A DNA stretch of 64,000 nucleotides from the IMG/VR virus record IMGVR_UViG_3300033182_000674, positions 62,001-126,000 of that record; one strand, given 5' to 3'. The notes beneath the pieces were generated by a model. It was not told where the DNA came from and ran no database searches. It was given only the letters and a program-made list of their open reading frames with translations. Positions 16,566-54,544 of this stretch are shown piece after piece (within the stretch, counting starts at the first letter, position 1; every line of letters begins with the position of its first letter). Made by a program: the position numbers and the translations under genes.

Positions 16566-17015
16566 TTAATATTGTTGTCCTGCTGCGCCATTACTGTATT
16601 CCAACCTCTCATTACTTATTGTTGCAAGATCATTACCCGAATCGGTAATAGAGTATGTCCATGTGAGTGGCAAACCTTCTGGATCAGTTGCAGACAATAC
16701 AATTGAAGTTGCACTACCACCAATCGAATCTAGATCATAAGCTGCTTCTGGCAAACCACCAGAATCCCAAGTAGGTGTTTGATTGATTAAAGCGATATTA
16801 TACCAGCCAGCACCAGTCCAGATATACAATCGATTTGTGTCTGCAACAAATACTTGATCACCAACTTGGTTACCTGATGCAGGTAGATCATTAGAAGTAT
16901 TATATGACTCTGCTGCAGGTGCTACTATTTCTTGCAATAAATCGGCATCAATATCAGAAGATTGTATTGTTGTTGATGTACCTAATAATAATCCTAAATT
17001 TCTACCGTTTGACAT
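16566..17015 (-). pseudogene. Truncated adhesin paralog
   Basis: Carries the GDQVFV..TNRLYIW.G.GWYNIALIN and ATDPEGLPLTW.Y modules but stops mid Ig-like domain with no terminal domain. Confidence 0.5.
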
Positions 17016-17027
17016 TCTTATTCCGCC

Positions 17028-18032: not shown

Positions 18033-18035
18033 ATA

Positions 18036-24923: not shown

Positions 24924-27860
24924 TTAGCCATTCCATGTAGCCATTGAGCTAAATGTATTGTGAACATTTTGTACTTCACTTTGAGATAATTCAACATCCC
25001 AGAATAATATAGCTTGAATTTCATAACCAGATGACCAGCTTAATCCGTAATTGTTCAATTGGAAACCATTTGATGATGCGCCGCCAATTCCCGTTATAGC
25101 ATATGAATTAAATAAATTAGCATCCATCGCATTCCAAGCAGCTTGTCTATGTCCCACGTTTGTACCATTTACATATTGTGCAGTCCAAGTATAACTATTT
25201 CCAAGGTCTGAAGACGATGATGGATCCATTACACCTATATATTGCGACCCGCCAGGACCCCATAAAACTGTTTGATTATCGGCACCGTCATTGGGTACTG
25301 ATAATATTATAATAGCGGTATTAACATTACTAAAGATATTAGTATCGAATGGAATATTAGTATTAGTTGCAATATTAAGTACTGTAGTACCACCTATTCC
25401 AGCACCATAAGTAGCAGATCCAAGGGTAATAGTTTGATCGTTACCCGCCGCACTTAAATCATATAAATCTGTTCCAGTGCCAGGATAGCTACTTGTCTTT
25501 CTAAAATCATACCAACCAATCAAATTAGCTAATTGTGGTAAAGGAAACGCAAGTGATATTGTTGAATATGCTGAAGAGAAATTTAATCCATCAGTTGCAG
25601 TAAATCTAGCAGTAATATCACCAGAATTATTAAGATCAGAATCCGGAGTTAATGTAAATGTACCATCATTATTGTTTACGATTGTAACTTTAGTTTGATT
25701 AGATGGATTAATATCAACATCATATGTTATAGGGAAACCTTCTGGATCTTCTGCTGCAATTGTTAATGTTGATGCAGAATCTCCTATATTTAAGCTTAAT
25801 GTTGAAGGTGGGCTTGTTGTCCATAATGGTGAATCATTAGGACCACTATAAATTTGTTTCCAAGCTGAACCGTCCCAAACATATAATGTTTTAGAACCAG
25901 TAACAAATGCTAAACTACCAGCAGTATCTGGGAATGGTAGTTGTGCTTCAGCCGCATATTCTTCTACACCTTGTGGAATAGTTACTCTAGCTGCAACATA
26001 ATCAGAATCAACAACTGCTGCAACATTTGATTCAATATTATTCCAACCTAAATCATTAACTGCAGTATTAACAATTGAAGTTAATTGAGTATCTGGAATT
26101 TCTCTAATATAATATTTACTAAATGATGTTACTACCAATTCATCGTTTAATGACGCTGCTGGTGAAAGTGTTATAACTGTGCCATTTGTTGCAGTGTAAT
26201 CATCTGATGTTAATAACACACCATTCAAATGAACTAAAATATTTCCAGGATTATATGATAAAGTATTACCATTATCATCGCCATTAGAGAAAGCAACTTG
26301 CCCCGCAGTGGCAGTAAATTTAAATACATCTACTGTAGCTTCAGTATCAGGGAAACTATTATCTAAATAATTAGCTACCTTACTATTAATATAATCAGAG
26401 TCTAAATCAATATTAAACATCTGAGACATAGATACAATTAAGATCTCATCATTAGCATTAATAGCTTGCTGAATAGTTACTGTTGATCCATCATTTGCTG
26501 TATAGTCAGGACCTTCTACAATTAATACACCATTTAAATAAATTAAAATGTTACCATTATCATATGATAAAGTATTGCCATTAGCATCACTACCAGAGAA
26601 TATAGTCTGGCCTTGAGATGCAAGATATCTAAACTTTTGTAATCCTAATGTAGATGGAAAATCTGGTAAGTTAAGTGGGACATAATGTGCAACACGATTA
26701 TCAATATAAGATGAATCAATAATATCAGAAGCTTCTAATACATAACGTGTTTTAAAATTATGAATATTAACTGCATCTTGAGAATCTAATGCAGCATTAA
26801 ATACAATAGTATCACCTGCAGAATATGTTGTATAGTCATTTCCTTCAGTAAGTAAAATACCATTTACAAAGACTTGAAGATGACCAGCATCATAATTTAG
26901 TGTATTACCATTAATATCTAGACCAGTGAATTGAGTTTGACCTTGAGATGCAAAGTACTTAAACTTATCAATCTCTCTAGTACCGCCATAGATTTCATTG
27001 ATTCTATTTAAAACATAATTTGAATCAATAATATCTTCATACGCAAAATTAACTTTAACATTTGTTGTTACGATTGTAATTTCAGTATCAACCGCTAATT
27101 GAACAGTTGTTGTAATCTTTGAAGGACTGGTTGAAACAACATAGTCTTCGGTTTCAACTAATAAAACACCGTTAGAATATACATCAATCGTTTTATTAAC
27201 TAGATCTAATGTATTACCATTTGCATCAGTTCCAGTATATTCAGTTTGTCCAGAAGTTGTAACATAATGATATTTAGTTACATCAATTTCGCCTGGAAAA
27301 TCTAATGGAACATTAGGTGATAAGAATAATGTAGAGAAAGAGTTAATATAAATCTCTTCTCCAGCAAGAGCAGGTGTTGTTAATGTAATTGTATTACCAT
27401 TAGAAACGGTATAGTCTTCGCCTTGAATATAAAGAACACCATTTGAAAATACTTGTACAGCATTATCTTCAAAAGCTAAAGTATTACCATTTGCGTCCAA
27501 ACCAGTAAATTGTGTTTGATTTGCTGTAGCGACAAATTTAAAGTAATTAAAGAATCCTTGACCGACAAGTACTTGGCCATTAACCTTATTAAGAATATAA
27601 TCAGAATCAATAATTGCTTCTAATGATGCTGAATCGATTGTACCAGATCCACCACTACCAAAAGTAGCATCTCTAAATTCGAATTTATTTGTGGTATCAT
27701 TCCAAACAATAACTTGATTATCAGTAGCAGTATCAGTATCGATTCCTAATCCAGGCAGACGTAAACGATCGCTTGAGCTATCGCCCAAAACAATATCGTT
27801 AGCTGGTGCACTAGCAGTTAACGTAAAGACTTCAGCAAGTGATCTACCTTTTGTCGCCAT
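24924..27860 (-). CDS. Large tail-associated protein with five tandem repeats, Ig-like module and C-terminal lectin-like domain
   Basis: Same repeat as 20131-23118 plus LYVWDG, AEDPEG and WYD.....SYPGTG...DLS modules. Confidence 0.7.
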   Translation of the reverse strand: MATKGRSLAEVFTLTASAPANDIVLGDSSSDRLRLPGLGIDTDTATDNQVIVWNDTTNKFEFRDATFGSGGSGTIDSASLEAIIDSDYILNKVNGQVLVGQGFFNYFKFVATANQTQFTGLDANGNTLAFEDNAVQVFSNGVLYIQGEDYTVSNGNTITLTTPALAGEEIYINSFSTLFLSPNVPLDFPGEIDVTKYHYVTTSGQTEYTGTDANGNTLDLVNKTIDVYSNGVLLVETEDYVVSTSPSKITTTVQLAVDTEITIVTTNVKVNFAYEDIIDSNYVLNRINEIYGGTREIDKFKYFASQGQTQFTGLDINGNTLNYDAGHLQVFVNGILLTEGNDYTTYSAGDTIVFNAALDSQDAVNIHNFKTRYVLEASDIIDSSYIDNRVAHYVPLNLPDFPSTLGLQKFRYLASQGQTIFSGSDANGNTLSYDNGNILIYLNGVLIVEGPDYTANDGSTVTIQQAINANDEILIVSMSQMFNIDLDSDYINSKVANYLDNSFPDTEATVDVFKFTATAGQVAFSNGDDNGNTLSYNPGNILVHLNGVLLTSDDYTATNGTVITLSPAASLNDELVVTSFSKYYIREIPDTQLTSIVNTAVNDLGWNNIESNVAAVVDSDYVAARVTIPQGVEEYAAEAQLPFPDTAGSLAFVTGSKTLYVWDGSAWKQIYSGPNDSPLWTTSPPSTLSLNIGDSASTLTIAAEDPEGFPITYDVDINPSNQTKVTIVNNNDGTFTLTPDSDLNNSGDITARFTATDGLNFSSAYSTISLAFPLPQLANLIGWYDFRKTSSYPGTGTDLYDLSAAGNDQTITLGSATYGAGIGGTTVLNIATNTNIPFDTNIFSNVNTAIIILSVPNDGADNQTVLWGPGGSQYIGVMDPSSSSDLGNSYTWTAQYVNGTNVGHRQAAWNAMDANLFNSYAITGIGGASSNGFQLNNYGLSWSSGYEIQAILFWDVELSQSEVQNVHNTFSSMATWNG

Positions 27861-37368: not shown

Positions 37369-38055
37369 CTATTCTGATATAAAATCATTTGCCATAGGGA
37401 ATACCTCAGCAATCACCTTGGCACATTCTCTTGCAAGTTCCATATGCTCTTTTTGAGTTCCATGACCAGATCGCAATTGGATATAATGTACCCAACTACG
37501 AAGAGTTCCATTGACATACAATCTAGACTTAGTTAAACCTTCTGGTAAAACAACTCTAGCTTGTTCTTTTGCAATACCATTATGGATTGCCCATTCATAT
37601 GCTTCTTTAGCAGCATCAATAACTCTTTTCTGATGTTGTTCAAAAAGATAAGCTAACTTTTGATCATCAGTTGGAATAGAGTTTTGACGATTATTATAAT
37701 CTTGTAGACGACATTCACGTGTTACAAATTGATCACCAAACTCTGCTGGATCTGCATAACGTTGTGAAAATTCTTGGAATGAAAAAGATCTATGACGGAG
37801 TAATTGACGAGCAATATCTCTAGTAGTATCTACTTCAATACAAGCGCTTACCATCTCTAATGGAGACCAATGAGCATGCTTAATAAGATAATTAATAAGC
37901 TTTTCTGAAGTTTCAATATTATATTGATTATTAGGATTAGATACTCTAGCTGCAAATGCAATCAACTCTTGAACATTATTCATTTGTTCAGATAGATTGT
38001 CATCAAATACATCTTTATGTAATTGTGAGTAACTTATAAGTTTTGCTTTCATCAT
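37369..38055 (-). CDS. thyX: FAD-dependent thymidylate synthase
   Basis: RHRSFSFQEFSQRY ThyX signature, H.SP.E, EQAR.VLP. Confidence 0.95.
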   Translation of the reverse strand: MMKAKLISYSQLHKDVFDDNLSEQMNNVQELIAFAARVSNPNNQYNIETSEKLINYLIKHAHWSPLEMVSACIEVDTTRDIARQLLRHRSFSFQEFSQRYADPAEFGDQFVTRECRLQDYNNRQNSIPTDDQKLAYLFEQHQKRVIDAAKEAYEWAIHNGIAKEQARVVLPEGLTKSRLYVNGTLRSWVHYIQLRSGHGTQKEHMELARECAKVIAEVFPMANDFISE

Positions 38056-41206: not shown

Positions 41207-42400
41207 TTACATAAAACCGTCAAGAGTTGATGGCTCGTATTCAGACCAGAATGTCTGAGCTTTATTATCTTGAACAGCATATGGTGCTTCAATAGTATCA
41301 ATATTGCCACCTAAGAAGTTTTTAATATTAGTTGCCATATCCATTGCAGTACTTACTGGAACATTTTGTGCAATCATATTAAGATTTCTGCGTCCACCGT
41401 GCAAGATAAAATCTTTTGGCATCTTCATAATATCAAGAGCTTCTCTTGTATTGATATAACGATTTTCATCAGGGTGCGTAAGAGTAGTTACAAAATGACC
41501 AACAAAAGCACCAATATGTCCTTTACCAATCTCTGTCATCTTACGCATTAAGTTACCACCATTATCTAACTTATCTTGCATACGCTTACATTTTTGAGCA
41601 ATACTATCATGACCATTTGCTCTCATCCATTTAGCAACTTCAGTATATTTTATTTTATTTGCTTCAATATAAACCAATGGATTAGTCGACTTCTCAATCA
41701 TATTAAAGAAATCCATATGAGTAATTCCACCGTGCATTTCTTCTAAAATATATTGATAGTATGGATTATCAGTTGGCTTTTGTAAATTAGTTGGACTATT
41801 CCACATTAAGTCATTTACAATATCATCATGTTTAGATGATCTAATCTGTTCTTCAATACGAGTAAAAGGCCGTTTATAATATTCAAATACTGGAATCTTA
41901 TTACCTTTCCAAAAGAAGTAAAAGGTTCTATCACGTACTTGTGATAAGCCATGAAGAAGAGATTTAGTTTTGTATATACTAAGTGTATATCCATTTTCTC
42001 TTGCAAGCTTTCTCATTTGATGAACGATTGGTGCACCCATTTTACTTGCAAGACGTGGAGCATTTTCTCCCCAAAAAACAGCAGGTTTAATTTCTTCAAG
42101 AACATATTTAGCTGATGTAATCATCCAATCATTAGTTGTACTATCACTACGACTACTTGGGCTTAAAGAAGATAAACCTGCACAAGGACAAACTGCATTC
42201 ACTACGTCCACAGATTTATTTTGTAAATCACCTTGATCTAATAAATGATAAGGTACTTCATTATTATAATATTCTAAAAGTTGTTTATCATTATTTTCAA
42301 AAGGTGTATAAGAGAGAATATAATCAGGTTTATTACCAAATACATTCTGCATTGCAATCGTTTCACCACCAATAAGTGGTACTATACTAGCGTACTTCAT
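41207..42400 (-). CDS. DNA cytosine-C5 methyltransferase-like protein
   Basis: Motif IV CPCAGLS, VI ENA, VIII Q.R.R, IX/X R....RE....M..P.DF...QNVP; degenerate motif I (PLIGG). Confidence 0.75.
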   Translation of the reverse strand: MKYASIVPLIGGETIAMQNVFGNKPDYILSYTPFENNDKQLLEYYNNEVPYHLLDQGDLQNKSVDVVNAVCPCAGLSSLSPSSRSDSTTNDWMITSAKYVLEEIKPAVFWGENAPRLASKMGAPIVHQMRKLARENGYTLSIYKTKSLLHGLSQVRDRTFYFFWKGNKIPVFEYYKRPFTRIEEQIRSSKHDDIVNDLMWNSPTNLQKPTDNPYYQYILEEMHGGITHMDFFNMIEKSTNPLVYIEANKIKYTEVAKWMRANGHDSIAQKCKRMQDKLDNGGNLMRKMTEIGKGHIGAFVGHFVTTLTHPDENRYINTREALDIMKMPKDFILHGGRRNLNMIAQNVPVSTAMDMATNIKNFLGGNIDTIEAPYAVQDNKAQTFWSEYEPSTLDGFM

Positions 42401-43400
42401 TTAAAAATTTCCTCGCAGTTGCTAGTGCAGAATTAATTGCTTGGTGCATATCAACATAAACGTACATACCACAACGACCAATAAACTGCATCTTAGTTTC
42501 ATCTACCATATCTTTATACAGTTTATATATCTTTCTATTCTTGCCTTCTACATCTTTTACTGGATAATAACGCTCAAGATTATTATCACGATAGTCACAC
42601 GGTTCTTCATAAGTAAGAACAGTCATCTTATTATTATCGCCATGACCTGGAATATTTTTCCATTCGGTTACTCGAGTATATGGACCATCATGAGTAAAGT
42701 TAACAGTACCAGTTGGTAGCACTTTAGACATTGGTAATTCCACATTATGGAACTTAATAGAGCGATACGGTAATTCGCCATGACAAAAATGGAAGTAATC
42801 ATCAATTGGCATTGAATTAAAGATATAATCGTAATCATCTTCCATTTCATATGTAAATTCTGTATCTAAATTTACTGTAATGTTTTCATGTAAGAAAATA
42901 CTTTCAAAGACTTCAGTATAACCATTCTTTGGCATCATCTGATATTCATCATTAGGAAAATATAATTCGTTATCATCATCGCGAGTAGGAATACGATTAA
43001 TAATTGATGGATCTAGTTCATCAAGTGTTTTACCCCACATTTTTAGAGTATAAGGTCTAAAGAAAATATCTAAAACGTTTTCTTCACCAACAATCTCTTT
43101 AGTTTCTTTATTTACTGGAAGAGTTACATAACGGCCATCACTTAACTGTGCTTTTACTTTATGTTTATAATCAATCCATTCAGTAAACTTAGATAGCCAA
43201 TCAACAACATCTTTATTATTAGTATGAAACAAATGTGGACCATACTGGTGGATTCTGATGCCATTCGCATCAACATAATCATAGGCATTACCACCAATAT
43301 GGTCGCGTTTATCGATGACAGTTACTTCATGATCTGCTTCTGCTAATTCACGAGCAATAACTGCACCAGAAAATCCAGCACCAACTACTAAGACTTTCAT
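42387..43400 (-). CDS. glf: UDP-galactopyranose mutase
   Basis: VVGAGFSG, HIGGNAYD, H.YGPHLFHT, LPYRS, RYYP, GRCG.Y.Y.DMHQAI. Confidence 0.92.
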   Translation of the reverse strand: MKVLVVGAGFSGAVIARELAEADHEVTVIDKRDHIGGNAYDYVDANGIRIHQYGPHLFHTNNKDVVDWLSKFTEWIDYKHKVKAQLSDGRYVTLPVNKETKEIVGEENVLDIFFRPYTLKMWGKTLDELDPSIINRIPTRDDDNELYFPNDEYQMMPKNGYTEVFESIFLHENITVNLDTEFTYEMEDDYDYIFNSMPIDDYFHFCHGELPYRSIKFHNVELPMSKVLPTGTVNFTHDGPYTRVTEWKNIPGHGDNNKMTVLTYEEPCDYRDNNLERYYPVKDVEGKNRKIYKLYKDMVDETKMQFIGRCGMYVYVDMHQAINSALATARKFLNEVR

Positions 43401-44509
43401 AGAATAACTCCAAGTTCTTTTTGCTGTAGTTCTTTATCTAATGGATGATTCTTATATAGCATATGTTTTTGTGCTGCTGCTGTTTCCATCAATTCGTCAA
43501 GAGACATTTGCTCTACATCATGAGCAGTTAAGCTTGCAAGTTTTTCATCTCCATATAATAAAAACATTTCATCATATGCACCAATAAGAATAGAACCTGC
43601 GTCGGCAACTTGTAATGGACGAGCTCTCCACCAGCCTGATCCTGCATGATCATAACCTGGCATTAAACAACCCCATTGTTCTGCATAAACTTTACACATA
43701 TCACCTTCACCAAGCCGACGTTGTTTTTCTTTACGAGAACCAAAGAATTCAATCTCCCAATTAGTCACATTTTGTTTCTTTAACCACTTAGCAGTCTTAC
43801 CTTGTACTAATGAAGCAAAGTTAAAGATCTTAGCTTTATTAGAAGGAGATACAGTATCTTCAGCTTCAGTTAACGTCATTTGTTGTTCCATAAAATCCAT
43901 TTCATCTACAGGAATATCACCACGATCACCGGGTTTACGGTTACGATGATATGGATTAGGATTATAACCAACCAACAATTCTTTAGGATAGTCAATCAAC
44001 TTACTTAGATCACCACCCATAAAGACAGACATTAATACACGAGCTTTCTTTTCGCCAATATATTTTACTGCATCTAAAAGAATATCAGTATGTGGTTCCA
44101 ATACTTCACGTGAAAGAGTTGGATCACAACCTTGACTTTGTTGAATAGTAAACTCTTTTAATAGAGATTCTTTATCAGTGCATGATTGAATACCTTTAAA
44201 AATATCAGCTGTTTGCCAATCATCAAATGCTAGTACAAGATTTTCTTTTGGTGTAGCGTGAATAGCCCATAGACCATTATAAAAAGCAAGTTGTAATGCT
44301 TGACGTGGTGAAGCAAGAAAACAAATAACACGATGATATTCAGATAAATCTTCACCAATATTAACAAGACGTTGTTCTACTTCATAACCCATATCTTCTA
44401 AACAACGTATTAAAGAATAATGTGAAGGAACTACTTTCAATTGCTGGCGTAAATAAAAATCTTTTGTTGTTTGATTCTTATTCATACCAGTGATTAGAAT
44501 TTTTTTCAT
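43397..44509 (-). CDS. Putative GT-B DNA glycosyltransferase (T4 beta-glucosyltransferase-like)
   Basis: KVVPS...L..MGYEV...D...Y.R.I N-terminus and R..Q...AG.IL. C-terminal motif resemble T4 BGT as I recall it; start reassigned to 44509 (TAATG overlap). Confidence 0.6.
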   Translation of the reverse strand: MKKILITGMNKNQTTKDFYLRQQLKVVPSHYSLIRCLEDMGYEVEQRLVNIGEDLSEYHRVICFLASPRQALQLAFYNGLWAIHATPKENLVLAFDDWQTADIFKGIQSCTDKESLLKEFTIQQSQGCDPTLSREVLEPHTDILLDAVKYIGEKKARVLMSVFMGGDLSKLIDYPKELLVGYNPNPYHRNRKPGDRGDIPVDEMDFMEQQMTLTEAEDTVSPSNKAKIFNFASLVQGKTAKWLKKQNVTNWEIEFFGSRKEKQRRLGEGDMCKVYAEQWGCLMPGYDHAGSGWWRARPLQVADAGSILIGAYDEMFLLYGDEKLASLTAHDVEQMSLDELMETAAAQKHMLYKNHPLDKELQQKELGVIL

Positions 44510-45366
44510 TATTTTAACTCCATTTGATATGCTGATTCGCACATATCTTTTAGATCACGTTTAGTTTCCAAATACTTAGATTTGTTATCAACACACAACT
44601 CAGCTGGATCGCCTTCGCGGCGTGGTCCATATTCAATTTTAAAGTTGTTTGTACATTGTACCATTATATCACAAACCTCTGCATTTGTAAACCCTTTACC
44701 AGAACCAAGACATTCATAGTCTTTATTCTCAGGAGTATTTAGTGCAGCATTACAGATAGCATCTGCGAGATCTACCACATGAATATAATCACGAATACAT
44801 GTTCCATCACGCGTAGGATAATCATCTCCAAAGATAACCATCTTCTCTCTTTTACCAGCAGCAACCTCAGCTGCTACTCTAATAATATGAGTCGATTCAC
44901 CAATCTGTCTAAACTCACCACCAGATCCAGCAACATTAAAGAATCTAAAGATAGTATAATTCTTTGCCATCTGTTTAATAACATCTTCAGCCGCTACTTT
45001 AGATTTAGCATATGGAGAAATAGGATCAAATGCGCCAGCAGTAGAAGCAAAGATAAAGTGATCACAATCTACATTCTTTAAAACTTTCATTGTCTTATGA
45101 AGATTAGTATCATAATATTTTGCAGGATTAGTCATCGATTCTGCAACAGAAATATAACCTGCACAATGTACTACTACATCATATCGTCCAACCCACAAAG
45201 CAGCATCATGAATATCATAATGTGTTAGGTACTTTCTAACTGGTTTAGCATTAGGTGAATCTTCAATATCAACACCTGTTACTTTAAATCCAGCATCATA
45301 TAATGCTTTTGCGGTATGAGAACCAATATAACCATTTACACCTGTTACTAATGCAGTCTTACTCAT
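44509..45366 (-). CDS. galE: UDP-glucose 4-epimerase-like SDR
   Basis: TG..GYIGSH, ES...P.KYY..N, YAKSK, R.FNVAG, DGTCIRDYIHV.DLA, RREGDP. Confidence 0.88.
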   Translation of the reverse strand: MSKTALVTGVNGYIGSHTAKALYDAGFKVTGVDIEDSPNAKPVRKYLTHYDIHDAALWVGRYDVVVHCAGYISVAESMTNPAKYYDTNLHKTMKVLKNVDCDHFIFASTAGAFDPISPYAKSKVAAEDVIKQMAKNYTIFRFFNVAGSGGEFRQIGESTHIIRVAAEVAAGKREKMVIFGDDYPTRDGTCIRDYIHVVDLADAICNAALNTPENKDYECLGSGKGFTNAEVCDIMVQCTNNFKIEYGPRREGDPAELCVDNKSKYLETKRDLKDMCESAYQMELK

Positions 45367-45835
45367 TTTCTACTCCCAAGCGTTTAATATTAACTTTTGC
45401 TTCATTGCACATCGAAACAGTAGTATCATAAGACTCTTGCCAAATTGGTGGAATCTCTCCTTCCATATCCCAATAGATGTTTTTGACACCTACTTGGATA
45501 ACACCTTTGGCACATTCAGAGCACATAGGAAGCCCCCAGATGTAAAGATCTGATCCGTCTAAAGATACACCATTATACGTTGCATTATATATGCAGTTCA
45601 TTTCTGCGTGCACGACGTATTTATATTTAGTCTCGCGATCCTCATATCGGTTCTCGTCATCATTGATTCCTCGTGGGAAACCATTATAACCCTGTGCAAG
45701 TACTTGACCTTTTGAGCCGACTGCTACAGCACCGATCTTTTTAGATGGATCCTTAGACCAACCAGAAAATTCTTTCGCTAAATTCATATAGCGGTTTTGC
45801 CATGATTTATTAACAGGCCACATAATTAATCCCAC
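45359..45835 (-). CDS. cd: dCMP deaminase
   Basis: SKDPS, GYNGFPRG, HAE.N, P.C.EC. Confidence 0.92.
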   Translation of the reverse strand: MGLIMWPVNKSWQNRYMNLAKEFSGWSKDPSKKIGAVAVGSKGQVLAQGYNGFPRGINDDENRYEDRETKYKYVVHAEMNCIYNATYNGVSLDGSDLYIWGLPMCSECAKGVIQVGVKNIYWDMEGEIPPIWQESYDTTVSMCNEAKVNIKRLGVENE

Positions 45836-46371
45836 AAACTTCTAAAATATTTTCCAAATAAACGAAATCCATTGTCCATACGTTTAGAATATTCATCATA
45901 CTTTTCTTTATCAAACTTTCCTTTTAAAGAACTTGTATCCATTTCATACCACTCATATTCTTCATTTTCACCCTCATCATTAGGAAATAAAAGTAATTGA
46001 GCTGGTCCAACACCAGTACTCTCCATTTCAAATAAACTTACTGAATCGCTATCATAGTTAAAGAACTGGTCTTCCCATTCGTTATTAAGACTAGCAAAAG
46101 CAAAAATCATTTCATCAATTACATAATCCCAAGCTTTAAAATGATATGGATCTGTTTCACCTACTTCAATAGGCAAATCACAGCGTAAGCGTTCTGGACG
46201 ATCTTCCATATCAACAAATGGCGCACCATGTTTTTCCTTTTTTAATTGTCTCAACATTGGTTCAACTAACAATGCTAGTGTATGATCCATTGACCAAGTA
46301 TCGTAATCATCTATATGAATAGAGACATCACGATAACCTTCTTCTACATATGGTCCAATTTGTACATTCAT
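45826..46371 (-). CDS. Conserved phage hypothetical protein
   Basis: DTWSMD.TLA, W....DEMIFAF, GF.LFGKY...LWD; start reassigned to 46371 (ATGA overlap). Confidence 0.65.
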   Translation of the reverse strand: MNVQIGPYVEEGYRDVSIHIDDYDTWSMDHTLALLVEPMLRQLKKEKHGAPFVDMEDRPERLRCDLPIEVGETDPYHFKAWDYVIDEMIFAFASLNNEWEDQFFNYDSDSVSLFEMESTGVGPAQLLLFPNDEGENEEYEWYEMDTSSLKGKFDKEKYDEYSKRMDNGFRLFGKYFRSLWD

Positions 46372-46823
46372 TTCATTAAATCTCCAAAGAAAGAGAAAGC
46401 AACATCTTTTGCAACTTGATCTGTTACTTCCCACATCGGTATCATAAGATTAATTTCCTCTGATGTTGGTGGTACAAACATTTTATTTGTATCATCAAAC
46501 CGACCTTCATTAATAGTATTCATCCAAATTACATAATCAGGTTTAAGCAACTTACGCGTTTCAGGTGTAGGAGAAATCATATCAACAATAGAATAAGGAT
46601 ATACAGAATTATCTACAAGTTTACGCATACGAGTTGCAGCTCGAATACGACCTTCTTCTGAAAAATCCCAATCTTGATATGCTTCACGAATTTTATCTGC
46701 ATTAAACCAATTAGGAATTACGCCATGATTTTCAAATTCAGTTTTTAGTTTTTCAGCAAATGTAGTCTTACCTGAACCAGGTAGACCCATCACTAATATC
46801 ATTTTATTCGACATCCCAATCAT
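46368..46823 (-). CDS. Adenylylsulfate-kinase-like P-loop kinase
   Basis: GLPGSGKTT, NAD.IR, DFS.EGR.R. Confidence 0.75.
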   Translation of the reverse strand: MIGMSNKMILVMGLPGSGKTTFAEKLKTEFENHGVIPNWFNADKIREAYQDWDFSEEGRIRAATRMRKLVDNSVYPYSIVDMISPTPETRKLLKPDYVIWMNTINEGRFDDTNKMFVPPTSEEINLMIPMWEVTDQVAKDVAFSFFGDLMK

Positions 46824-47511
46824 TCCTAATTAAATCAAAATGGCGTTCATATACATGTAAATTTTGAACTTGCCAGTAAATTGTACTTGGTGTAATAACA
46901 TCATCAATAGTTTCTGTTTGACGATTAATGTCATCACATAGTTTACGAAGAACATATTTTTGCCAAGCAAAATCATTCTTATATCCAAAGACGACATCAT
47001 TTGATCGCATTTGAACTACTGCATACATTTTTTTATTACGAATATAATAAGTTACACCATTAGTACAAATAAAATCAGACTTACCATCTTCATTAAATTC
47101 TGTCCAGATAGTTGGACGTTGATAAACCATTTCAGCACGACGGCCGTCTGGATTATTGAGTAACTCATTTAATACTTTCTCGTATTGATTACCATATTGT
47201 TCAGAGAAAATTAGTAATCCATAATTTGAATTAATAAGGCCGTCGCTGTTAGCAGCATACTTCCAAGCAGCAGGAGGATCGCGATCTTCGCCGAAAATGT
47301 CATTGATATTGTTCGATTGTTTTTCATACCATTCAATCTCCTTCATGATATATTCATTATTAGGTTTACCAAAGATTGCTGGTTCATCAGCAATAAAAGA
47401 AGCGCCAATCCATTCAATAGTCTTAGCACCAGTTTTATCTGTGGTAAAGTTCTTTGCTCTTAGTTCGCCTTCAAAGAAAGCACGGACATTTTTAACTGTT
47501 GGGATATTCAT
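46804..47511 (-). CDS. 42: dCMP hydroxymethylase (T4 gp42 homolog)
   Basis: DKTG.KTIE.IGASF.ADEP.IFG, INSNYG, SDF.CTN, MRSNDVVFG..ND.AWQKYVL, LHVY.RHF, all closely matching T4 gp42; Asp retained at the cytosine-specificity position. Confidence 0.92.
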   Translation of the reverse strand: MNIPTVKNVRAFFEGELRAKNFTTDKTGAKTIEWIGASFIADEPAIFGKPNNEYIMKEIEWYEKQSNNINDIFGEDRDPPAAWKYAANSDGLINSNYGLLIFSEQYGNQYEKVLNELLNNPDGRRAEMVYQRPTIWTEFNEDGKSDFICTNGVTYYIRNKKMYAVVQMRSNDVVFGYKNDFAWQKYVLRKLCDDINRQTETIDDVITPSTIYWQVQNLHVYERHFDLIRNDWDVE

Positions 47512-47930
47512 TATTTAGCCTTTTCAATATTATAAACTGATTTACGTAAACCACTACTTGAGAATCTATGATCTCGTTTATTAAAGTAAAGTTCAATATC
47601 ACGTCGACGACATTCATCTTTACCAGTAAAGTCTTTATCACGATACTCATCACCGAGAATACGAATATTAATCGGATACATGTTTATTATATCAAGTAAA
47701 TCGGCTTCTGTACAATACGGAATGATTTCATCTACATATTTTACTGCAGCCAATTGTGTATGTCTTTCTACAATGGTTTGTACCGGTGAATTCTTTTCAG
47801 GACGATCAACTGATGGATCTACTTGTAATCCACAAATTAAATAATCACATCGTGCTTTTGCATCACGCAACATTGTGATATGACCAGCATGTAATAAATC
47901 AAATGTACTACAAGTAAATCCTACAATCAT
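47511..47930 (-). CDS. TagD/RfaE-like cytidylyltransferase
   Basis: FDLLHAGH, ER...L....YVDE, R.H..SSS. Confidence 0.85.
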   Translation of the reverse strand: MIVGFTCSTFDLLHAGHITMLRDAKARCDYLICGLQVDPSVDRPEKNSPVQTIVERHTQLAAVKYVDEIIPYCTEADLLDIINMYPINIRILGDEYRDKDFTGKDECRRRDIELYFNKRDHRFSSSGLRKSVYNIEKAK

Positions 47931-48040
47931 TGCTTCTTTTCCTTCGCTTTGTTATTCATCAATTTACAAGATCCCCATTTACATGATGGGTTTATTTTCT
48001 TTTTACATACTACACAAGTATCAGTCTGAGATGAATTCAT
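47927..48040 (-). CDS. Small Cys/Lys-rich peptide (37 aa), not in the ORF track
   Basis: MNSSQTDTCVVCKKKINPSCKWGSCKLMNNKAKEKKQ; stop overlaps the next ATG (ATGA). Confidence 0.4.
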   Translation of the reverse strand: MNSSQTDTCVVCKKKINPSCKWGSCKLMNNKAKEKKQ

Positions 48041-48377
48041 TGTATTCTTCTTCTGTCATAAATGATTCAATTAAACTAGTATCTTCAACTTCTAATTTAA
48101 ACATCCATACAGATGCATCATCATTTAAAGTTTCTGGTGTATCTAGAATATCTTCATTAACTTCGACTACTGTTCCAGCCATTGGACAATAAACATCTGA
48201 TGCTGCTTTTACAGATTCAACTACTGCACAATCTTCATCTGCTTCATAGTACTTACCAACTTCTGGTAACTCAATGAAAACTAAATCACCAAGTAATTCT
48301 GCAGCATGCGCAGTAATACCAACAAAGACGTAATCTCCGTCTTGTTCTACCCATTCGTGTTCTTTTGTATAACGCAT
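48021..48377 (-). CDS. gcvH: Glycine cleavage system H protein
   Basis: YT.EHEWV, VGIT..A...LGD.VF.ELP, lipoyl-Lys motif VESVKAASD. Confidence 0.93.
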   Translation of the reverse strand: MRYTKEHEWVEQDGDYVFVGITAHAAELLGDLVFIELPEVGKYYEADEDCAVVESVKAASDVYCPMAGTVVEVNEDILDTPETLNDDASVWMFKLEVEDTSLIESFMTEEEYNEFISD

Positions 48378-48721
48378 TATTCTTTTCTTCCTCCGTCAAA
48401 GACGCAAACAAAGTATAAGCCATTCTCATTAGCATATACTCTATGAAAAGCACCATCTGGTATTTGAATAATATCACCTGCTCTTACATTGAACACTTCA
48501 TCATCAATTTCCATTTCACCATCGCCATACATGAAAAAATAAACTTCTTCTTGTCCTTCATGGCTATGACCATTGGTTGCTTTATTTGGTTGTAATCTTG
48601 TTGAACTAAGTACTAGGTTATTTAGTAATGTATTATCAGTGACCACATAACGATCATCTGATTTTACTACATTACCATTTACTACCCACCCAGCATGAAC
48701 ATAATCTTCAATATCAATCAT
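48377..48721 (-). CDS. Cupin-domain protein
   Basis: GHSH..QEEVY.F..G.G and GD...IP.G.FHRV. Confidence 0.85.
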   Translation of the reverse strand: MIDIEDYVHAGWVVNGNVVKSDDRYVVTDNTLLNNLVLSSTRLQPNKATNGHSHEGQEEVYFFMYGDGEMEIDDEVFNVRAGDIIQIPDGAFHRVYANENGLYFVCVFDGGRKE

Positions 48722-49481
48722 TATTAAAACCTAACAATTTATTGTTATATTCCAATAGAGATTTAGTAGCAGTTGGATCAATGCCTACACTTTCAGCCCA
48801 AGCACACCAACCATAGATATCTTTTGGAATACATTTACTATTAGCTCCACGATTATCAGGGAAGACAAAAGTCCACCATAGATTTTGTCGTGGGTCATCA
48901 CCATAAACAGCTTCTCGAATAGTATAATAATCTACTCCAGCTGCTTCACATGCATCATATAATTCTTGGCATTGCATTACCTTATAGAAAATTGCACGAT
49001 TTTCAGAGAATTTAATAATCTCTGCTTCATATGCAGATACTTGACGAATATTAACATTAGCATTATAAGCTTGTTGATAACATTCAATAACTTTACGAGT
49101 ATCTTCTTTAGTACCACCAAGAATCATAAACTGACGAGAATCCATTTGTAAGAATGGATGATTAGGTGTTTCACCAAGATATTCTGGTTGAACTACAATG
49201 CGTTTATTATATTTCTTAGCCATCTCATCAGCAAATCCTGGTTGAGTAGCAGAACGAATAACAATGAAATCACATCCGCATTCTTTAATAGCATCTTCTA
49301 CAGCAGAACAATCTAATCCATCGCCTTGATTCCACGGAGTAGGTACGGCAAGAAAAGCAATATCACAATTTTCTAAAGGCTTTGTAAATCCTTCGATATA
49401 TTTATCGTAAACTTGTGCATCAGGAAAAAGTTTTTGTGTTGCTTTGCCAATCCAACCGTATCCAATGATTCCTACTTTCAT
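48714..49481 (-). CDS. UDP-glucose/GDP-mannose dehydrogenase-like protein (lacks C-terminal domain)
   Basis: GIIGYG.IG, AVPTP, IRS, PEYL, AE..K..EN, CIPKD. Confidence 0.8.
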   Translation of the reverse strand: MKVGIIGYGWIGKATQKLFPDAQVYDKYIEGFTKPLENCDIAFLAVPTPWNQGDGLDCSAVEDAIKECGCDFIVIRSATQPGFADEMAKKYNKRIVVQPEYLGETPNHPFLQMDSRQFMILGGTKEDTRKVIECYQQAYNANVNIRQVSAYEAEIIKFSENRAIFYKVMQCQELYDACEAAGVDYYTIREAVYGDDPRQNLWWTFVFPDNRGANSKCIPKDIYGWCAWAESVGIDPTATKSLLEYNNKLLGFNND

Positions 49482-51994: not shown

Positions 51995-54544
51995 TTACGA
52001 GAAGAAATCTTCAAGAGTATTTCTTTCGTCAACAGACCAACCAACAGCTTCAAGGATAGGACTTAGAGGTTCAATGAAAGTCTTTTCAAACTGCATATCA
52101 TAGTCAATATACTTATTTAGATTCAATGGCTCTGGAAGGTAATCAGGGAACGAGATAACGTTTTCCTTGATAGGATTAGGTAACTTCATATATGAGAATT
52201 TAACCTTATCACCAGGTTGAATCATTGAATATTTGTTTTCAAGAGATAACTCTTTGATATAGTGATTATATAGCAAAGCACCGCGAACATGAATCGGCGT
52301 GCCTTTACCATAAATTGTAGTGCGGTTTTTCCACTTGTCAATTTCATTTACACCACGAGGGAATGATACATCTTCAGGTGGTAGTTGTTTAAATTCTTGT
52401 TTGAAGTCATTGATAAACTTACGTGTCTTTTCTTCAGAACCAGAGATAATAATCTTAAATGATTCCTTAAACTTATTACGAACAACTTCTGGTGTAGATG
52501 ATTTAATAGCTTCGATACCCATGATCTTGAGTTTAGGTTCAGCATATTGTACACCTTCATTGTTATGTACATTAAGGATATAACGTTTCTTTGCAGTCCA
52601 AATACCACGATCAGCAATAACTTCACGACCCATTTCCATTCGAGCACGGTAACCATTCATTACATCGAATAGTTTAGCATAAGCATCAGCAATAACTTTT
52701 TCAAAATGTTCTTGGCAGATTTTATCAAGTGCAGCAACTGGATCTTTAGGCTGTAACTTTTCTACAAATGGACCGAAGTTAATATAAACAGAATCAGTAT
52801 CAATCGCAATAACATAATCAACGTTATCAGTCTTAAGAATCTTATTCATCTCGATGTTGATAGCTTTTTCAGCCCACTTAATCGATAATTGGCCTGTAAG
52901 AGTTACACTTTCAGCCAAAGCATTGTCGAAGTACTTAAAGTATTTGTTAGCTAATGCACCATAAAGAGAGTTAAGAAGAATCTTAATCGCCATCTGGTTA
53001 TTTTCAAGTTGGTTAATTTCAGATTCTATTTCATGAGATTTTTCTTGTTCATAACGCTGTTTAGCTTCAAGCATTTTCTTCTTGACTACTTTACGTTCTG
53101 AATACAATTCAACGATAAGTTCCGGAATAATACCTTGACGATCTTTATGAAAACCAACACCACTTGCTGTTGCAGCTATATCACCAGTAGTAACTGGTTC
53201 AGACATATTTAAATATTTTTCTGGGCCAACTGGGAAACGTTTATCGATATCACGTACAATAGTTTCGGGTGAGATATTATATTGTACAATAATATTAGGA
53301 TACAGTGAGTTTAAGTCAAATGATACCACCCAATTATGTAGACCAACTTGTGGATCTTTTACATAACCACCAGCAATACTTTTATTTTCACCGCTAGAGC
53401 CTTCAGCACCAACAACTGCGTATGGAATCTTAGGAATCTGACCAATTGGAGATATAATACGTTTCTTCATCAAACGACGATAGATAATTGATTCCCATAT
53501 AGAAGTAGTACCAAAAGTATCATTAATGTTAACGCCACCTTTAAATGCAATCGTAAGAGCTAGGTTAATAAGACCCATCTTATCGTCCATACGTTTAACA
53601 AGCAAAGTATCTTTAATATTATAGTCAATAAACTTTTGGTGATTATGTTTATATAGAGTATGAAGACTACCATACTCAGAATATGATAATTTACTTTCGC
53701 CAAGTACCACGTGAGCAATATGATCTAACTTGTAAGATTCTTGAGCACCATAAGAGTAACCAAACTTCTTAAACAATTCAAGATAGTCTGCTTGTTGAAT
53801 GCCAGTTAGTTCATAACCATATTGAGTTCGTCCACCAATAACAGTATTACGTTCGTTAATAAGTTTCCAAGGAGACAAATGTTTAACTGCTTCTTCACCG
53901 CCAATTGCACGTATACGATTTACAAGATAAGGTACGTCAAAGAAACGAATATTCCAACCTGTTATAACATCAGGTGTATTTGCAATCCAATATTGTAAGA
54001 AAGAAGATAAAAGTTTTGCTTCGTTTTCACAACGATGATAAGCAATACCAACACCATGAGTATCAATCTCTGTTGCTTCAGGATTATATTCGTCCAATCC
54101 CCATACTTGATAGTAATCAGACTTACTAGATTTTAATGCAATAGAGATGACGGGATATGCTGCTTCCTCAGGCTTGGGGAAACCTTCATCGGAAGCAACC
54201 TCGATATCGAAAGTTACAACATTAACGTCATCCATGTTGAACTTGATGTCATTAGGGAATCTTTCAGTAATATACTGATGGATATAGTTGGTCGTACCAT
54301 AGATTTTGAAGTTGTCCATATCACCATACGATGTCATAAACTCTTTAGCTTCTTTCATCGTATCAAAATGAATTGAATCAACTGGAACGCCATCGAATGA
54401 TGTCCATTTAGTCTGACCTTTTGCTGGTACAAAAAAGGTAGGTGAGAATTTTTCTTTCTTTTCGACTTTTATGCCGTTTTCGTCATAGCCGCGATAAAGA
54501 ATGCTATTGCCATAACGATTAACTGATGTGTAAAAACCTGACAC
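51995..54544 (-). CDS. 43: Family B DNA polymerase gp43
   Basis: ExoI FDIEV, DLNSLYP, KILLNSLYGA, DTDS, KKRY; GTG start; promoter TTTACT-17-TATAAT at 54576-54604. Confidence 0.97.
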   Translation of the reverse strand: MSGFYTSVNRYGNSILYRGYDENGIKVEKKEKFSPTFFVPAKGQTKWTSFDGVPVDSIHFDTMKEAKEFMTSYGDMDNFKIYGTTNYIHQYITERFPNDIKFNMDDVNVVTFDIEVASDEGFPKPEEAAYPVISIALKSSKSDYYQVWGLDEYNPEATEIDTHGVGIAYHRCENEAKLLSSFLQYWIANTPDVITGWNIRFFDVPYLVNRIRAIGGEEAVKHLSPWKLINERNTVIGGRTQYGYELTGIQQADYLELFKKFGYSYGAQESYKLDHIAHVVLGESKLSYSEYGSLHTLYKHNHQKFIDYNIKDTLLVKRMDDKMGLINLALTIAFKGGVNINDTFGTTSIWESIIYRRLMKKRIISPIGQIPKIPYAVVGAEGSSGENKSIAGGYVKDPQVGLHNWVVSFDLNSLYPNIIVQYNISPETIVRDIDKRFPVGPEKYLNMSEPVTTGDIAATASGVGFHKDRQGIIPELIVELYSERKVVKKKMLEAKQRYEQEKSHEIESEINQLENNQMAIKILLNSLYGALANKYFKYFDNALAESVTLTGQLSIKWAEKAINIEMNKILKTDNVDYVIAIDTDSVYINFGPFVEKLQPKDPVAALDKICQEHFEKVIADAYAKLFDVMNGYRARMEMGREVIADRGIWTAKKRYILNVHNNEGVQYAEPKLKIMGIEAIKSSTPEVVRNKFKESFKIIISGSEEKTRKFINDFKQEFKQLPPEDVSFPRGVNEIDKWKNRTTIYGKGTPIHVRGALLYNHYIKELSLENKYSMIQPGDKVKFSYMKLPNPIKENVISFPDYLPEPLNLNKYIDYDMQFEKTFIEPLSPILEAVGWSVDERNTLEDFFS

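What the first reader, a model, noticed from the sequence alone, without database searches (positions are those of the whole stretch)
48021..48377. Phage-encoded GcvH inside the modification island: one-carbon supply for hmC and dTMP
GcvH with an intact lipoyl-lysine motif lies ~500 nt from the hydroxymethylase. Glycine cleavage regenerates 5,10-methylene-THF from THF. Both gp42 and ThyX (37369-38055) consume methylene-THF and release THF rather than DHF, and no DHFR is seen in this window. Inference: the phage boosts host glycine cleavage to feed both reactions, or uses GcvH as a carrier protein in the modification pathway.
Basis: partly seen in the sequence, partly recalled or inferred. Interest (0 to 1): 0.6.

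Follow-up and report, generated by a model that had tools for sequence, protein, structure and literature searches.

The report
Marine phage carries lone GcvH gene
A large T4-like marine phage carries a complete glycine-cleavage H-protein gene and no other part of that system, beside its hydroxymethylcytosine and thymidylate genes. It most likely boosts the host's supply of one-carbon units for phage DNA synthesis, but this has not been tested.

Summary
Window 48021-48377 (minus strand) encodes a 118-aa protein that passes the curated cut-offs for true GcvH. It keeps the lipoyl-lysine (K57), the residues that hold the aminomethyl-lipoyl arm, and the acidic face used by lipoate ligase. It lies 510 nt upstream of a T4 gp42-type dCMP hydroxymethylase, with catalytic Cys and cytosine-specifying Asp kept. 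ThyX is at 37369-38055.

The complete 219.7-kb phage genome has no DHFR, GcvT, GcvP, SHMT, FolD or lipoate ligase. So GcvH must be lipoylated by, and work with, host enzymes.

GcvH is rare in viruses: 28 of 2.9 million IMG/VR contigs. It was probably acquired at least three times, and never together with GcvT or a ligase. In other T4-like lineages it overlaps ThyX, sits one gene from gp42, or abuts dCMP deaminase.

However, gp42 is common in this phage's nearest relatives (14 of 30 contigs) and none of them has GcvH. In other phages GcvH sits next to recombination genes or a DsrC-like gene. The link to one-carbon supply for hmC and dTMP is therefore plausible (about 0.5) but not specific or proven. 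It is a new member of a known kind: a carrier-protein auxiliary metabolic gene.

The parts
48021..48377 (-). gcvH: 118-aa glycine-cleavage H protein, the only glycine-cleavage component in the phage genome
   Evidence: Pfam GCV_H E 4.5e-39. NCBIfam gcvH equivalog above cut-off. E. coli GcvH structures E 7e-34. pI 4.05, 31 acidic and 5 basic residues.
48207..48209 (-). Codon of the lipoyl-lysine K57, in the motif E-S-V-K-A-A-S-D
   Evidence: Sequence read directly. Aligned with the E. coli lipoyl-lysine (K64 in mature E. coli numbering, from the residue mapping used). Invariant in all 26 viral and metagenomic GcvH sequences aligned.
48377..48721 (-). 114-aa cupin. Its stop overlaps the gcvH start (TAATG), so the two are probably translationally coupled
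   Evidence: Pfam Cupin_2 E 2.4e-11. Coordinates. The same arrangement occurs in L008. Not conserved next to GcvH in other lineages.
48714..49481 (-). Short (255-aa) nucleotide-sugar dehydrogenase-like protein
   Evidence: Pfam UDPG_MGDP_dh N-terminal and central domains. NCBIfam NDP-sugar dehydrogenase E 6e-24, below cut-off. PHROG 9148.
47931..48020 (-). 90-nt spacer between gcvH and the next gene. It has no minus-strand terminator and is the site of a 572-bp (185-aa methyltransferase gene) insertion/deletion among close relatives
   Evidence: Terminator scan. Alignment with L008 shows the extra gene flanked by a direct repeat of the ribosome-binding site plus start codon. Both forms occur in public runs.
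47511..47930 (-). 139-aa cytidylyl/adenylyl-transferase (RfaE domain II / TagD-like)
   Evidence: Pfam CTP_transf_like E 2.9e-11. PHROG 7878 E 7e-33. NCBIfam.
46804..47511 (-). gp42-type dCMP hydroxymethylase, a consumer of methylene-THF
   Evidence: PDB 1b49 (T4 dCMP hydroxymethylase) E 8.7e-71. Catalytic Cys and the Asp179 equivalent are kept.
46368..46823 (-). 151-aa P-loop kinase, a candidate hydroxymethyl-dCMP kinase (inference)
   Evidence: Pfam APS_kinase E 2e-7. PHROG 10255 'kinase' E 7e-24. A homologue lies directly upstream of GcvH in L014.
45359..45835 (-). dCMP deaminase, which supplies dUMP to ThyX
   Evidence: Pfam dCMP_cyt_deam_1 E 1.3e-16. A homologue abuts GcvH in L032.
37369..38055 (-). 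ThyX, the flavin-dependent thymidylate synthase and second consumer of methylene-THF
   Evidence: Pfam Thy1 E 4.7e-45. NCBIfam thyX equivalog 152 bits against a cut-off of 87.9.
41207..45366 (-). The rest of the sugar and DNA-modification island: GalE-like epimerase (44509-45366), a virus-only 381-aa protein (43397-44542, possible glycosyltransferase, lead only), UDP-galactopyranose mutase (42387-43400) and a C5 DNA methyltransferase-like protein (41207-42400)

Best explanation
The gene is an auxiliary metabolic gene encoding a true H-protein, the small lipoylated carrier of the glycine cleavage system.

Proposed mechanism:
1. It is transcribed with the early nucleotide-metabolism genes.
2. 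The host's LipB/LipA or LplA lipoylates it on K57.
3. It joins the host's pool of H-protein, which shuttles between the host P-, T- and L-proteins.
4. H-protein is a stoichiometric co-substrate of those enzymes, so more of it raises glycine-cleavage flux. That recharges THF to 5,10-methylene-THF and also yields NADH.
5. The phage's own folate-dependent enzymes, gp42 dCMP hydroxymethylase and ThyX, release THF rather than DHF. They are the main sinks: up to 74,583 hydroxymethyl-C plus 145,093 T per genome copy.

Shown here: the identity of the protein, its intact functional residues, the absence of all other glycine-cleavage, lipoylation and folate-recycling genes, and recurrent placement beside ThyX, gp42 or dCMP deaminase in other phages. 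Inferred: lipoylation by the host, co-transcription, the rise in flux, and the destination of the one-carbon units.
For: True GcvH:
- It passes the gcvH equivalog cut-off. It fails the 'not_gcvH' and GcvH-related models.
- E. coli residues that hold the aminomethyl-lipoyl arm (Glu12, His13, Glu14, Leu35, Ser67, Asp68, Tyr70; PMC7733448) are all kept, as E6, H7, E8, L28, S60, D61 and Y63.
- The acidic residues that contact lipoate ligase (Asp43, Glu46, Glu61, Asp68, Asp86; bioRxiv 10.64898/2026.10.01.755906) are kept, as E36, E39, E54, D61 and D79. The pI is 4.05.

Dependence on the host:
- The genome has no GcvT, GcvP, LplA/LipB, SHMT, FolD, formyltransferase or DHFR.
- None of 28 GcvH-bearing viral records has GcvT or a lipoate ligase.

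Consumers:
- gp42 has intact catalytic residues. ThyX is confirmed.

Context in other lineages:
- A MazG-ThyX-GcvH cassette with an 8-nt ThyX/GcvH overlap in L013.
- gp42, a 112-aa gene, then GcvH in L026/L033-35.
- dCMP deaminase directly followed by GcvH in L032.
- A gp42-type TS-family gene three genes upstream of GcvH in L030/31.
- Binomial p = 0.008 under the naive null.

Selection:
- The GcvH tree forces at least three changes of the viral label.
- K57 is kept in 26 of 26 sequences.
- pN/pS is 0.21 against the 97% relative.

Precedent:
- Over-expressing the H-protein alone raises photosynthesis and biomass in plants (PMC6330538).

Operon-like layout:
- No minus-strand terminator separates gcvH from gp42. 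Upstream genes overlap one another.
Against: - GcvH is dispensable for hmC phages. None of the 30 nearest DNA-polymerase relatives has it, although 14 have gp42. One of these is a 152-kb contig that is 86% complete. Among the 954 GenBank phage records with a gp42 homologue (mostly phages of enterobacteria, Aeromonas and Microbacterium), none of the 15 GcvH-positive records is one of these; most of those 15 look like host DNA.
- Position is not conserved. In the L002 group GcvH lies about 10 kb from gp42, and in the P0002 phage it follows DsrC.
- A 203-kb GcvH-bearing contig (57% complete) shows neither gp42 nor ThyX.
- The neighbourhood enrichment falls to p 0.08-0.2 if only the early half of the genome is eligible, or if related lineages are merged.
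- pN/pS is higher than in the core genes and rests on nine substitutions.
- There is no evidence of expression. The one metatranscriptome that matched covers 272 nt of gp42 and nothing of gcvH.
- The host is unknown, so the presence of P-, T- and L-proteins in it is assumed.
Confidence: 0.5

Rival explanations
1. GcvH boosts host glycine cleavage, but for general ends rather than for hmC and dTMP in particular. Such ends include NADH and energy, ammonia release, purine and formyl-Met one-carbon units, or use of glycine-betaine-derived glycine. Its place in the island simply reflects a hot spot for accessory genes.
For: GcvH sits in several unrelated slots in other T4-like phages: between gp55-like and gp47 genes, between regA and the polymerase, and among small ORFs. 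gp42-bearing relatives lack it. It also occurs in viruses that have a classical ThyA, and in a giant-virus MAG. The spacer next to it is itself an insertion/deletion site.
Against: GcvH is tightly coupled to ThyX in L013, and it recurs within three genes of gp42-type genes in three further lineages and directly beside dCMP deaminase in L032. gp42 and ThyX are the only folate-dependent enzymes found in this genome.
Confidence: 0.2
2. GcvH works outside glycine cleavage as a lipoyl, redox or sulfur carrier. It could act like the LbpA proteins of sHdr sulfur oxidation, as a lipoyl-relay donor, or as an antioxidant dithiol, perhaps together with the phage's DsrC/TusE-like sulfur carriers.
For: In the phage with the 78%-identical GcvH, a DsrC-family gene overlaps the gcvH start. 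This genome has three DsrC-family genes elsewhere. Phages often encode small carrier proteins.
Against: The LbpA features are absent: no N- and C-terminal cysteine pair, and a pI of 4.05 rather than a basic surface. The protein fails the GcvH-related models. No sLpl/LplA-type ligase is present. The genome's radical-SAM genes are SPASM peptide-maturase-like, not LipA or LipS. No DsrC occurs in the 27 other GcvH viral records. The residues specific to the aminomethyl arm are kept.
Confidence: 0.1
3. GcvH is a dedicated carrier in DNA hypermodification or nucleotide synthesis. It might donate the aminomethyl group, or reducing equivalents, directly to a phage enzyme of the hmC and sugar island or to ThyX.
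For: GcvH is embedded in modification islands in two lineages. In the window it lies among sugar-nucleotide genes and gp42. In L026 the order is gp42, GcvH, a 2OG-Fe(II) oxygenase, a TET-associated glycosyltransferase and a C5 methyltransferase. It is translationally coupled to ThyX in L013. There is a precedent for aminomethyl-lipoyl-H protein donating to a pathway outside glycine cleavage, in [FeFe]-hydrogenase maturation (abstract of PMC11736057, listed).
Against: No conserved phage partner is shared across GcvH neighbourhoods. The phage has no enzyme to load the arm, so host P-protein would still be needed. There is no known modified base that needs such a donor. The protein has not diverged from housekeeping GcvH.
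Confidence: 0.08
4. GcvH is a passenger gene picked up from a host, with no function.
For: Its distribution is sporadic. pN/pS is higher than in the core genes.
Against: A viral clade spans 43-97% identity with every key residue kept. No bacterial donor is closer than about 62%. The frame is intact in four independent samples.
Confidence: 0.05

Closest known systems
Bacterial GcvH (E. coli gcvH; TIGR00527 / PF01597)
   Same: Same length, fold family, lipoyl-lysine motif, aminomethyl-arm cavity residues and acidic ligase-contact surface. It is 47% identical to E. coli GcvH and 49-62% identical to alpha- and gammaproteobacterial GcvH.
   Different: It is encoded by a virus and stands alone, without gcvT or gcvP. 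It sits among hmC and nucleotide-sugar genes. The phage clade has a 1-4 residue shorter loop before W91.
Carrier-protein auxiliary metabolic genes of marine phages (DsrC/TusE-like, SoxYZ, ferredoxin, plastocyanin). This comparison is from my own knowledge of the literature and was not tested here.
   Same: The phage encodes the small, substrate-like carrier of a host multi-enzyme pathway rather than the catalytic subunits. This genome also carries three DsrC-family genes.
   Different: The pathway is glycine cleavage and folate one-carbon supply. I found no study of this in phages. The one published mention found lists gcvH as an auxiliary gene of Marine Group II archaeal proviruses (PMC11515562).
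T4 deoxynucleotide module (gp42, td, frd, cd, gp1, gp56)
   Same: A gp42 homologue, a dCMP deaminase, MazG-type pyrophosphatases and a P-loop kinase are clustered near the replication genes.
   Different: T4 uses ThyA plus its own DHFR. This phage uses ThyX, has no DHFR, and adds GcvH.
LbpA lipoate-binding proteins of the sHdr sulfur-oxidation system
   Same: Homologous fold and a lipoylated lysine.
   Different: It lacks the terminal cysteine pair, the basic surface and the dedicated ligase and LipS genes.

Membership tests
GcvH (glycine cleavage system H protein) | Full-length match above the curated family cut-offs | tested here: met
   Pfam 133.5 bits against 22.2. TIGR00527 137.9 against 115.85, and NF002270 150 against 117.
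GcvH (glycine cleavage system H protein) | Lipoyl-lysine in the conserved E-S-V-K-A motif | tested here: met
   K57 aligns with the E. coli lipoyl-lysine.
GcvH (glycine cleavage system H protein) | Cavity residues that lock the aminomethyl-lipoyl arm (E. coli Glu12, His13, Glu14, Leu35, Ser67, Asp68, Tyr70) | tested here: met
   E6, H7, E8, L28, S60, D61 and Y63, from the alignment. The residue list is from PMC7733448.
GcvH (glycine cleavage system H protein) | Acidic surface recognised by canonical lipoate ligase, with pI below 4.5 | tested here: met
   E36, E39, E54, D61 and D79 are kept. The pI is 4.05.
GcvH (glycine cleavage system H protein) | Partner P-, T- and L-proteins available in the same genome | tested here: not met
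   No GCV_T or GDC-P in the complete phage genome. The L-protein was not searched for. Any partners must come from the unknown host.
GcvH (glycine cleavage system H protein) | Is lipoylated and supports glycine cleavage | not testable with these tools
   This needs an anti-lipoate blot or mass spectrometry, plus an enzyme assay or complementation.
LbpA (sHdr-associated lipoate-binding protein) | [quoted passage not shown] | tested here: not met
   Cysteines occur only at positions 50 and 64. There are 31 acidic and 5 basic residues. Criteria.
LbpA (sHdr-associated lipoate-binding protein) | Genomic association with sLpl(AB) ligase and LipS1/LipS2 | tested here: not met
   No BPL_LplA_LipB domain is present. 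The radical-SAM genes are SPASM-type.
GcvH-L of the SirTM / macrodomain / LplA2 operon | Adjacent sirtuin and lipoate ligase | tested here: not met
   No SIR2 and no LplA in the genome. The macrodomain was not searched for.
T4 gp42 dCMP hydroxymethylase (the neighbour at 46804-47511) | Catalytic Cys, and Asp in place of the TS Asn that selects uracil | tested here: met
   SDFICTN and KNDFAW align with T4 Cys148 and Asp179.

The most novel reading that the evidence does not exclude
The phage H-protein couples directly to the phage's own enzymes. Reduced (dihydrolipoyl) H-protein left after the T-protein step hands its electrons to the FAD of ThyX. Glycine would then supply both the methylene group and the reducing power for dTMP, in a closed glycine + dUMP -> dTMP + CO2 + NH3 cycle. 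Alternatively, the aminomethyl-lipoyl arm is a donor for a further cytosine modification. The ThyX/GcvH overlap in L013 and the placement inside two modification islands do not exclude this, and no tool here could test it.
Probability: 0.06. Interest if true: 0.85.

Novelty: new member of a known kind. Interest (0 to 1): 0.5.

Why it matters
hmC cannot be salvaged from host DNA. Every hmC, and every de novo T, costs one methylene-THF. For this genome that is up to about 220,000 one-carbon units per copy.

If a lone H-protein raises host glycine-cleavage flux, it would show that one-carbon supply limits replication of phages with modified DNA in the sea. It would add glycine and folate metabolism to the pathways that marine viruses rewire. 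It would also give a simple experimental handle, because the H-protein alone would act as a flux valve.

The fact that different virus lineages took H, and never T or P, is in itself evidence about which component limits the system in vivo.

Tried and rejected
- **Complex prediction.** A job with E. coli GcvT and the phage GcvH returned no verdict (score 0.00, controls not run). It counts neither for nor against binding.
- **Expression.** The only RNA run that matched holds one 272-nt contig on gp42 and nothing on gcvH. It is a contig set, so it shows nothing about transcription.
- **LipA or LipS among the genome's four radical-SAM hits.** Rejected. They are weak SPASM-type peptide-maturase-like proteins near tail genes.
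- **LbpA-like sulfur role prompted by the DsrC neighbour.** Disfavoured on sequence criteria.
- **SirTM / GcvH-L operon.** No sirtuin or ligase found.
- **A conserved partner next to GcvH.** All-against-all comparison of neighbours found none. The cupin is a neighbour only in the window and its 97% relative.
- **Close relatives in public collections.** Megablast of the island against GenBank phages found nothing. A single-protein scan of IMG/VR also found nothing. An alignment-based scan was needed.
- **PHROGs.** It has no GcvH family.
- **Donor or host inference from the nearest bacterial GcvH.** Only 49-57% identity to Rhodobacterales and Rhizobiales representatives, which is too distant to name a host.
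- **Large all-protein representative search.** Not used, because the family scans had settled the identity.
- **Other operator limits.** No other genetic code was needed. Read laying was given 2,678 letters.
Full report
**What is there**

The window is bases 62001-126000 of a 219,676-bp IMG/VR virus record that CheckV rates 100% complete. Its G+C content is 34%. Its DNA polymerase is 54% identical to marine Phage C48C1 and 46-48% identical to T4-like cyanophages. It also carries UvsX, UvsW, UvsY, gp41, gp44, gp45, gp46 and gp47-type genes. It is therefore a T4-like marine or estuarine myovirus. Public runs holding parts of this stretch are labelled marine, estuary, seawater and aquaculture metagenomes, from 16 studies.

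The ORF at 48021-48377 on the minus strand encodes 118 residues.
- It matches Pfam GCV_H over its whole length at E 4.5e-39.
- It passes the curated cut-offs of NCBI's gcvH equivalog and subfamily models. It falls far below the cut-offs for the 'not_gcvH' and 'GcvH-related' models.
- It aligns end to end with the E. coli GcvH crystal-structure sequences at E 7e-34.

**Functional residues**

The lipoyl-lysine is K57 (codon 48207-48209), in the motif E54-S-V-K-A-A-S-D61. This motif is invariant in an alignment with phage-like and bacterial relatives. K57 is kept in all 26 viral and metagenomic sequences compared.

Seven E. coli H-protein residues lock and then release the aminomethyl-lipoyl arm: Glu12, His13, Glu14, Leu35, Ser67, Asp68 and Tyr70 (PMC7733448). 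They correspond to E6, H7, E8, L28, S60, D61 and Y63 in the phage protein, and all are kept.

Five acidic E. coli residues contact lipoate ligase: Asp43, Glu46, Glu61, Asp68 and Asp86 (bioRxiv 10.64898/2026.10.01.755906). They correspond to E36, E39, E54, D61 and D79, and all are kept. The protein has 31 acidic and 5 basic residues and a pI of 4.05.

By the same preprint's criteria this is a GcvH-type protein and not an LbpA-type one. LbpA proteins have a cysteine pair near the two termini and a basic surface. The phage protein has cysteines only at positions 50 and 64.

**The neighbours**

All genes in this region lie on the minus strand, with overlaps or gaps of a few bases. In the direction of transcription the order is:
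- DNA polymerase
- a MazG-like pyrophosphatase
- a primase-like protein
- a 156-aa endonuclease-like protein
- a dATP/dGTP-pyrophosphohydrolase-like domain protein
- an 85-aa ORF
- a short nucleotide-sugar dehydrogenase-like protein
- a cupin, whose stop overlaps the gcvH start
- gcvH
- a 90-nt spacer
- a cytidylyl/adenylyl-transferase
- a thymidylate-synthase-family protein
- a P-loop kinase
- a virus-only 202-aa protein
- dCMP deaminase
- a GalE-like epimerase
- a virus-only 381-aa protein
- UDP-galactopyranose mutase
- a C5 DNA-methyltransferase-like protein
- UvsX

The thymidylate-synthase-family protein is a clear homologue of T4 gp42 (E 8.7e-71 to PDB 1b49). The nucleophilic Cys is kept, and so is the Asp that replaces the uracil-selecting Asn of thymidylate synthase. 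ThyX lies at 37369-38055. No minus-strand terminator lies between gcvH and gp42.

**What the genome lacks**

Family searches of the whole genome found none of the following:
- DHFR
- GcvT
- GcvP
- a lipoate or octanoyl transferase or ligase
- SHMT
- FolD
- a formyltransferase
- a sirtuin

The control genomes gave the expected hits in each search. Four weak radical-SAM hits far outside the window are SPASM-type, peptide-maturase-like proteins, not lipoyl synthases.

GcvH is thus the only glycine-cleavage part in the phage. gp42 and ThyX are the only folate-dependent enzymes identified. The H-protein can only work if the host lipoylates it and supplies the P-, T- and L-proteins.

**How common it is, and where it sits in other viruses**

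GenBank phages give 15 tblastn hits. Most are records whose context or size looks like host DNA, and none is a T4-like phage. PHROGs has no GcvH family. An alignment-based scan of 2.9 million IMG/VR contigs found 28 contigs. None of 27 searched carries GcvT. None of 28, including this genome, carries a lipoate ligase.

A maximum-likelihood tree of 65 sequences places the viral proteins in several separate clusters. Starred branches force at least three changes of the viral label:
- One clade contains only phage or metagenome sequences: the window, P0001 to P0004, L002, L029 and L026/L032/L033.
- Another cluster lies beside Rhodobacterales sequences.
- A distant clade includes a giant-virus MAG.

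The nearest bacterial representatives are only 49-57% identical, and at most 62% in the larger protein collection.

Contexts differ between lineages:
- **L008 (97%-identical relative).** Same island, plus one extra methyltransferase gene in the spacer.
- **L013 (142 kb).** A MazG-ThyX-GcvH cassette in which the ThyX stop overlaps the GcvH GTG start by 8 nt. gp42 lies 8 kb upstream.
- **L026 and L033-35.** The order is MazG, pyrophosphohydrolase domain, gp42, a 112-aa ORF, GcvH, a 2OG-Fe(II) oxygenase, a TET-associated glycosyltransferase and a C5 methyltransferase.
- **L032.** dCMP deaminase abuts GcvH.
- **L030/31.** A gp42-type gene lies three genes upstream of GcvH, and dCMP deaminase lies four genes downstream.
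- **L014.** A homologue of the window's P-loop kinase lies directly upstream.
- **L002 group.** GcvH lies between a gp55-like gene and gp47, about 10 kb from gp42.
- **P0002 phage (78% identical).** GcvH follows a DsrC/TusE-family gene.

Every thymidylate-synthase-family gene found in the T4-like GcvH contigs has the Cys plus Asp signature of gp42.

**How strong the link to gp42 and ThyX is**

Counting lineages, 4 of 13 have GcvH within three genes of gp42 or ThyX. Random placement in this genome would put 6.5% of genes that close.
- The naive binomial p is 0.008.
- It is 0.04 if the two lineages of one GcvH clade are merged.
- It is 0.08 to 0.2 if only the early half of the genome is eligible.

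This is suggestive, not decisive.

A control weakens the specific claim. Among the 30 nearest DNA-polymerase relatives with contigs of at least 10 kb, 14 carry gp42 and none carries GcvH. One of these is a 152-kb contig that is 86% complete. gp42 is therefore a trait of the clade, and GcvH is a sporadic accessory gene that hmC phages can do without.

**Is it under selection?**

Against the 97% relative, gcvH shows 5 synonymous and 4 non-synonymous differences, giving pN/pS 0.21. The polymerase, gp42, the deaminase and UvsX give 0 to 0.08. The cupin gives 0.40 and the kinase 0.21.

The counts are small. Together with the deep, residue-conserving divergence inside the phage clade, they argue for purifying selection that is weaker than on core genes. 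The same stretch, with an intact frame, is present in contigs of three further metagenome runs.

**Most likely mechanism**

I conclude that this is a carrier-type auxiliary metabolic gene. The host lipoylates the phage H-protein, and it enlarges the pool of the mobile co-substrate of the host P-, T- and L-proteins. This raises conversion of glycine plus THF to methylene-THF.

Over-expression of H-protein alone raises photosynthesis and biomass in plants (PMC6330538). That shows H can limit the pathway in vivo.

The phage's gp42 and ThyX both return THF (established enzymology). This explains why recharging THF matters, rather than reducing DHF, and why no DHFR is needed. The demand is large: 74,583 C and 145,093 T per duplex genome. 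hmC cannot be salvaged from host DNA.

I put this at about 0.5. A further 0.2 goes to the same mechanism serving general ends rather than pyrimidine synthesis in particular.

**Rivals**

- **Sulfur or redox carrier (about 0.1).** This was prompted by the DsrC neighbour and the genome's three DsrC-family genes. It conflicts with the sequence criteria that separate GcvH from LbpA.
- **Dedicated carrier in DNA modification, or a direct partner of ThyX (about 0.08).** It is not excluded, but no partner is conserved across GcvH neighbourhoods.
- **Functionless passenger (about 0.05).** Unlikely given the conservation.

**Novelty**

I found no paper that studies a phage GcvH. One survey lists gcvH as an auxiliary gene of Marine Group II archaeal proviruses (PMC11515562). 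Searches that combined GcvH or glycine cleavage with phage, hmC or auxiliary metabolic genes gave nothing else relevant.

The protein is an ordinary GcvH, and carrier-type auxiliary genes are a known kind. So this is a new member of a known kind. What is noteworthy is that unrelated viruses took H alone.

**Limits**

- Most comparison contigs are fragments, so absences in them are weak evidence.
- The host is unknown.
- No expression or activity data exist.
- The complex prediction gave no verdict.

Noticed in passing
window 47931-48020; L008:10358-11017: The 97%-identical relative has a 185-aa IRX15/GXM-like methyltransferase gene inserted between gcvH and the cytidylyltransferase. It is flanked by a direct repeat of the ribosome-binding site plus start codon (GGAAAAGAAGCAATGAT). 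Both the long and the short form occur in public metagenome contigs.
   Followed up: partly
G000:C1:26597-26902, 26925-27233 and 52917-53207 (outside the window); L135:401-697: The phage genome carries three DsrC/TusE-family genes. In the phage with the 78%-identical GcvH, a single-cysteine DsrC-like gene (C-terminus ...PKPTGCV) overlaps the gcvH start.
   Followed up: partly
G000:C1:179639-187306 (outside the window; locus L134:4640-12307): A cluster of about six paralogous ORFs of 311-349 aa lies next to a tail-fibre-like gene (Peptidase_G2). At least four have weak radical-SAM/SPASM peptide-maturase signatures. Their function is unknown, and they are not lipoyl synthases.
   Followed up: partly
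window 41207-45366: A GalE-like epimerase, UDP-galactopyranose mutase, a virus-only 381-aa protein (weak glycosyltransferase lead) and a C5 DNA-methyltransferase-like gene sit beside gp42. This suggests a galactofuranose-type sugar on hmC. It also raises the question of what a C5 methyltransferase does in an hmC phage.
   Followed up: partly
L026:3535-7880: Another T4-like lineage combines gp42, GcvH, a 2OG-Fe(II) oxygenase, a TET-associated glycosyltransferase and a C5 methyltransferase in one block. It therefore holds both the pre-replicative (gp42) and the post-replicative (methylase plus oxygenase) routes to modified cytosine.
   Followed up: no
L029:13880-16699 and 16709-18276: In this GcvH-bearing contig the DNA polymerase and UvsX homologues each appear as two consecutive ORFs. 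Possible causes are introns, inteins, frameshifts or split genes.
   Followed up: no
L048 (G018:C1:301883-302587): A gp42-like frame in a 380-kb record classed as a provirus has three in-frame TAA codons. It could be a pseudogene or a sign of stop-codon reassignment.
   Followed up: no
L002:9483-11421: In the L002 phage group gcvH occupies the slot between the gp55-like and gp47-like genes. In T4 (from memory) that slot holds the alpha-glucosyltransferase gene, which would make it a recurring accessory-gene slot.
   Followed up: no
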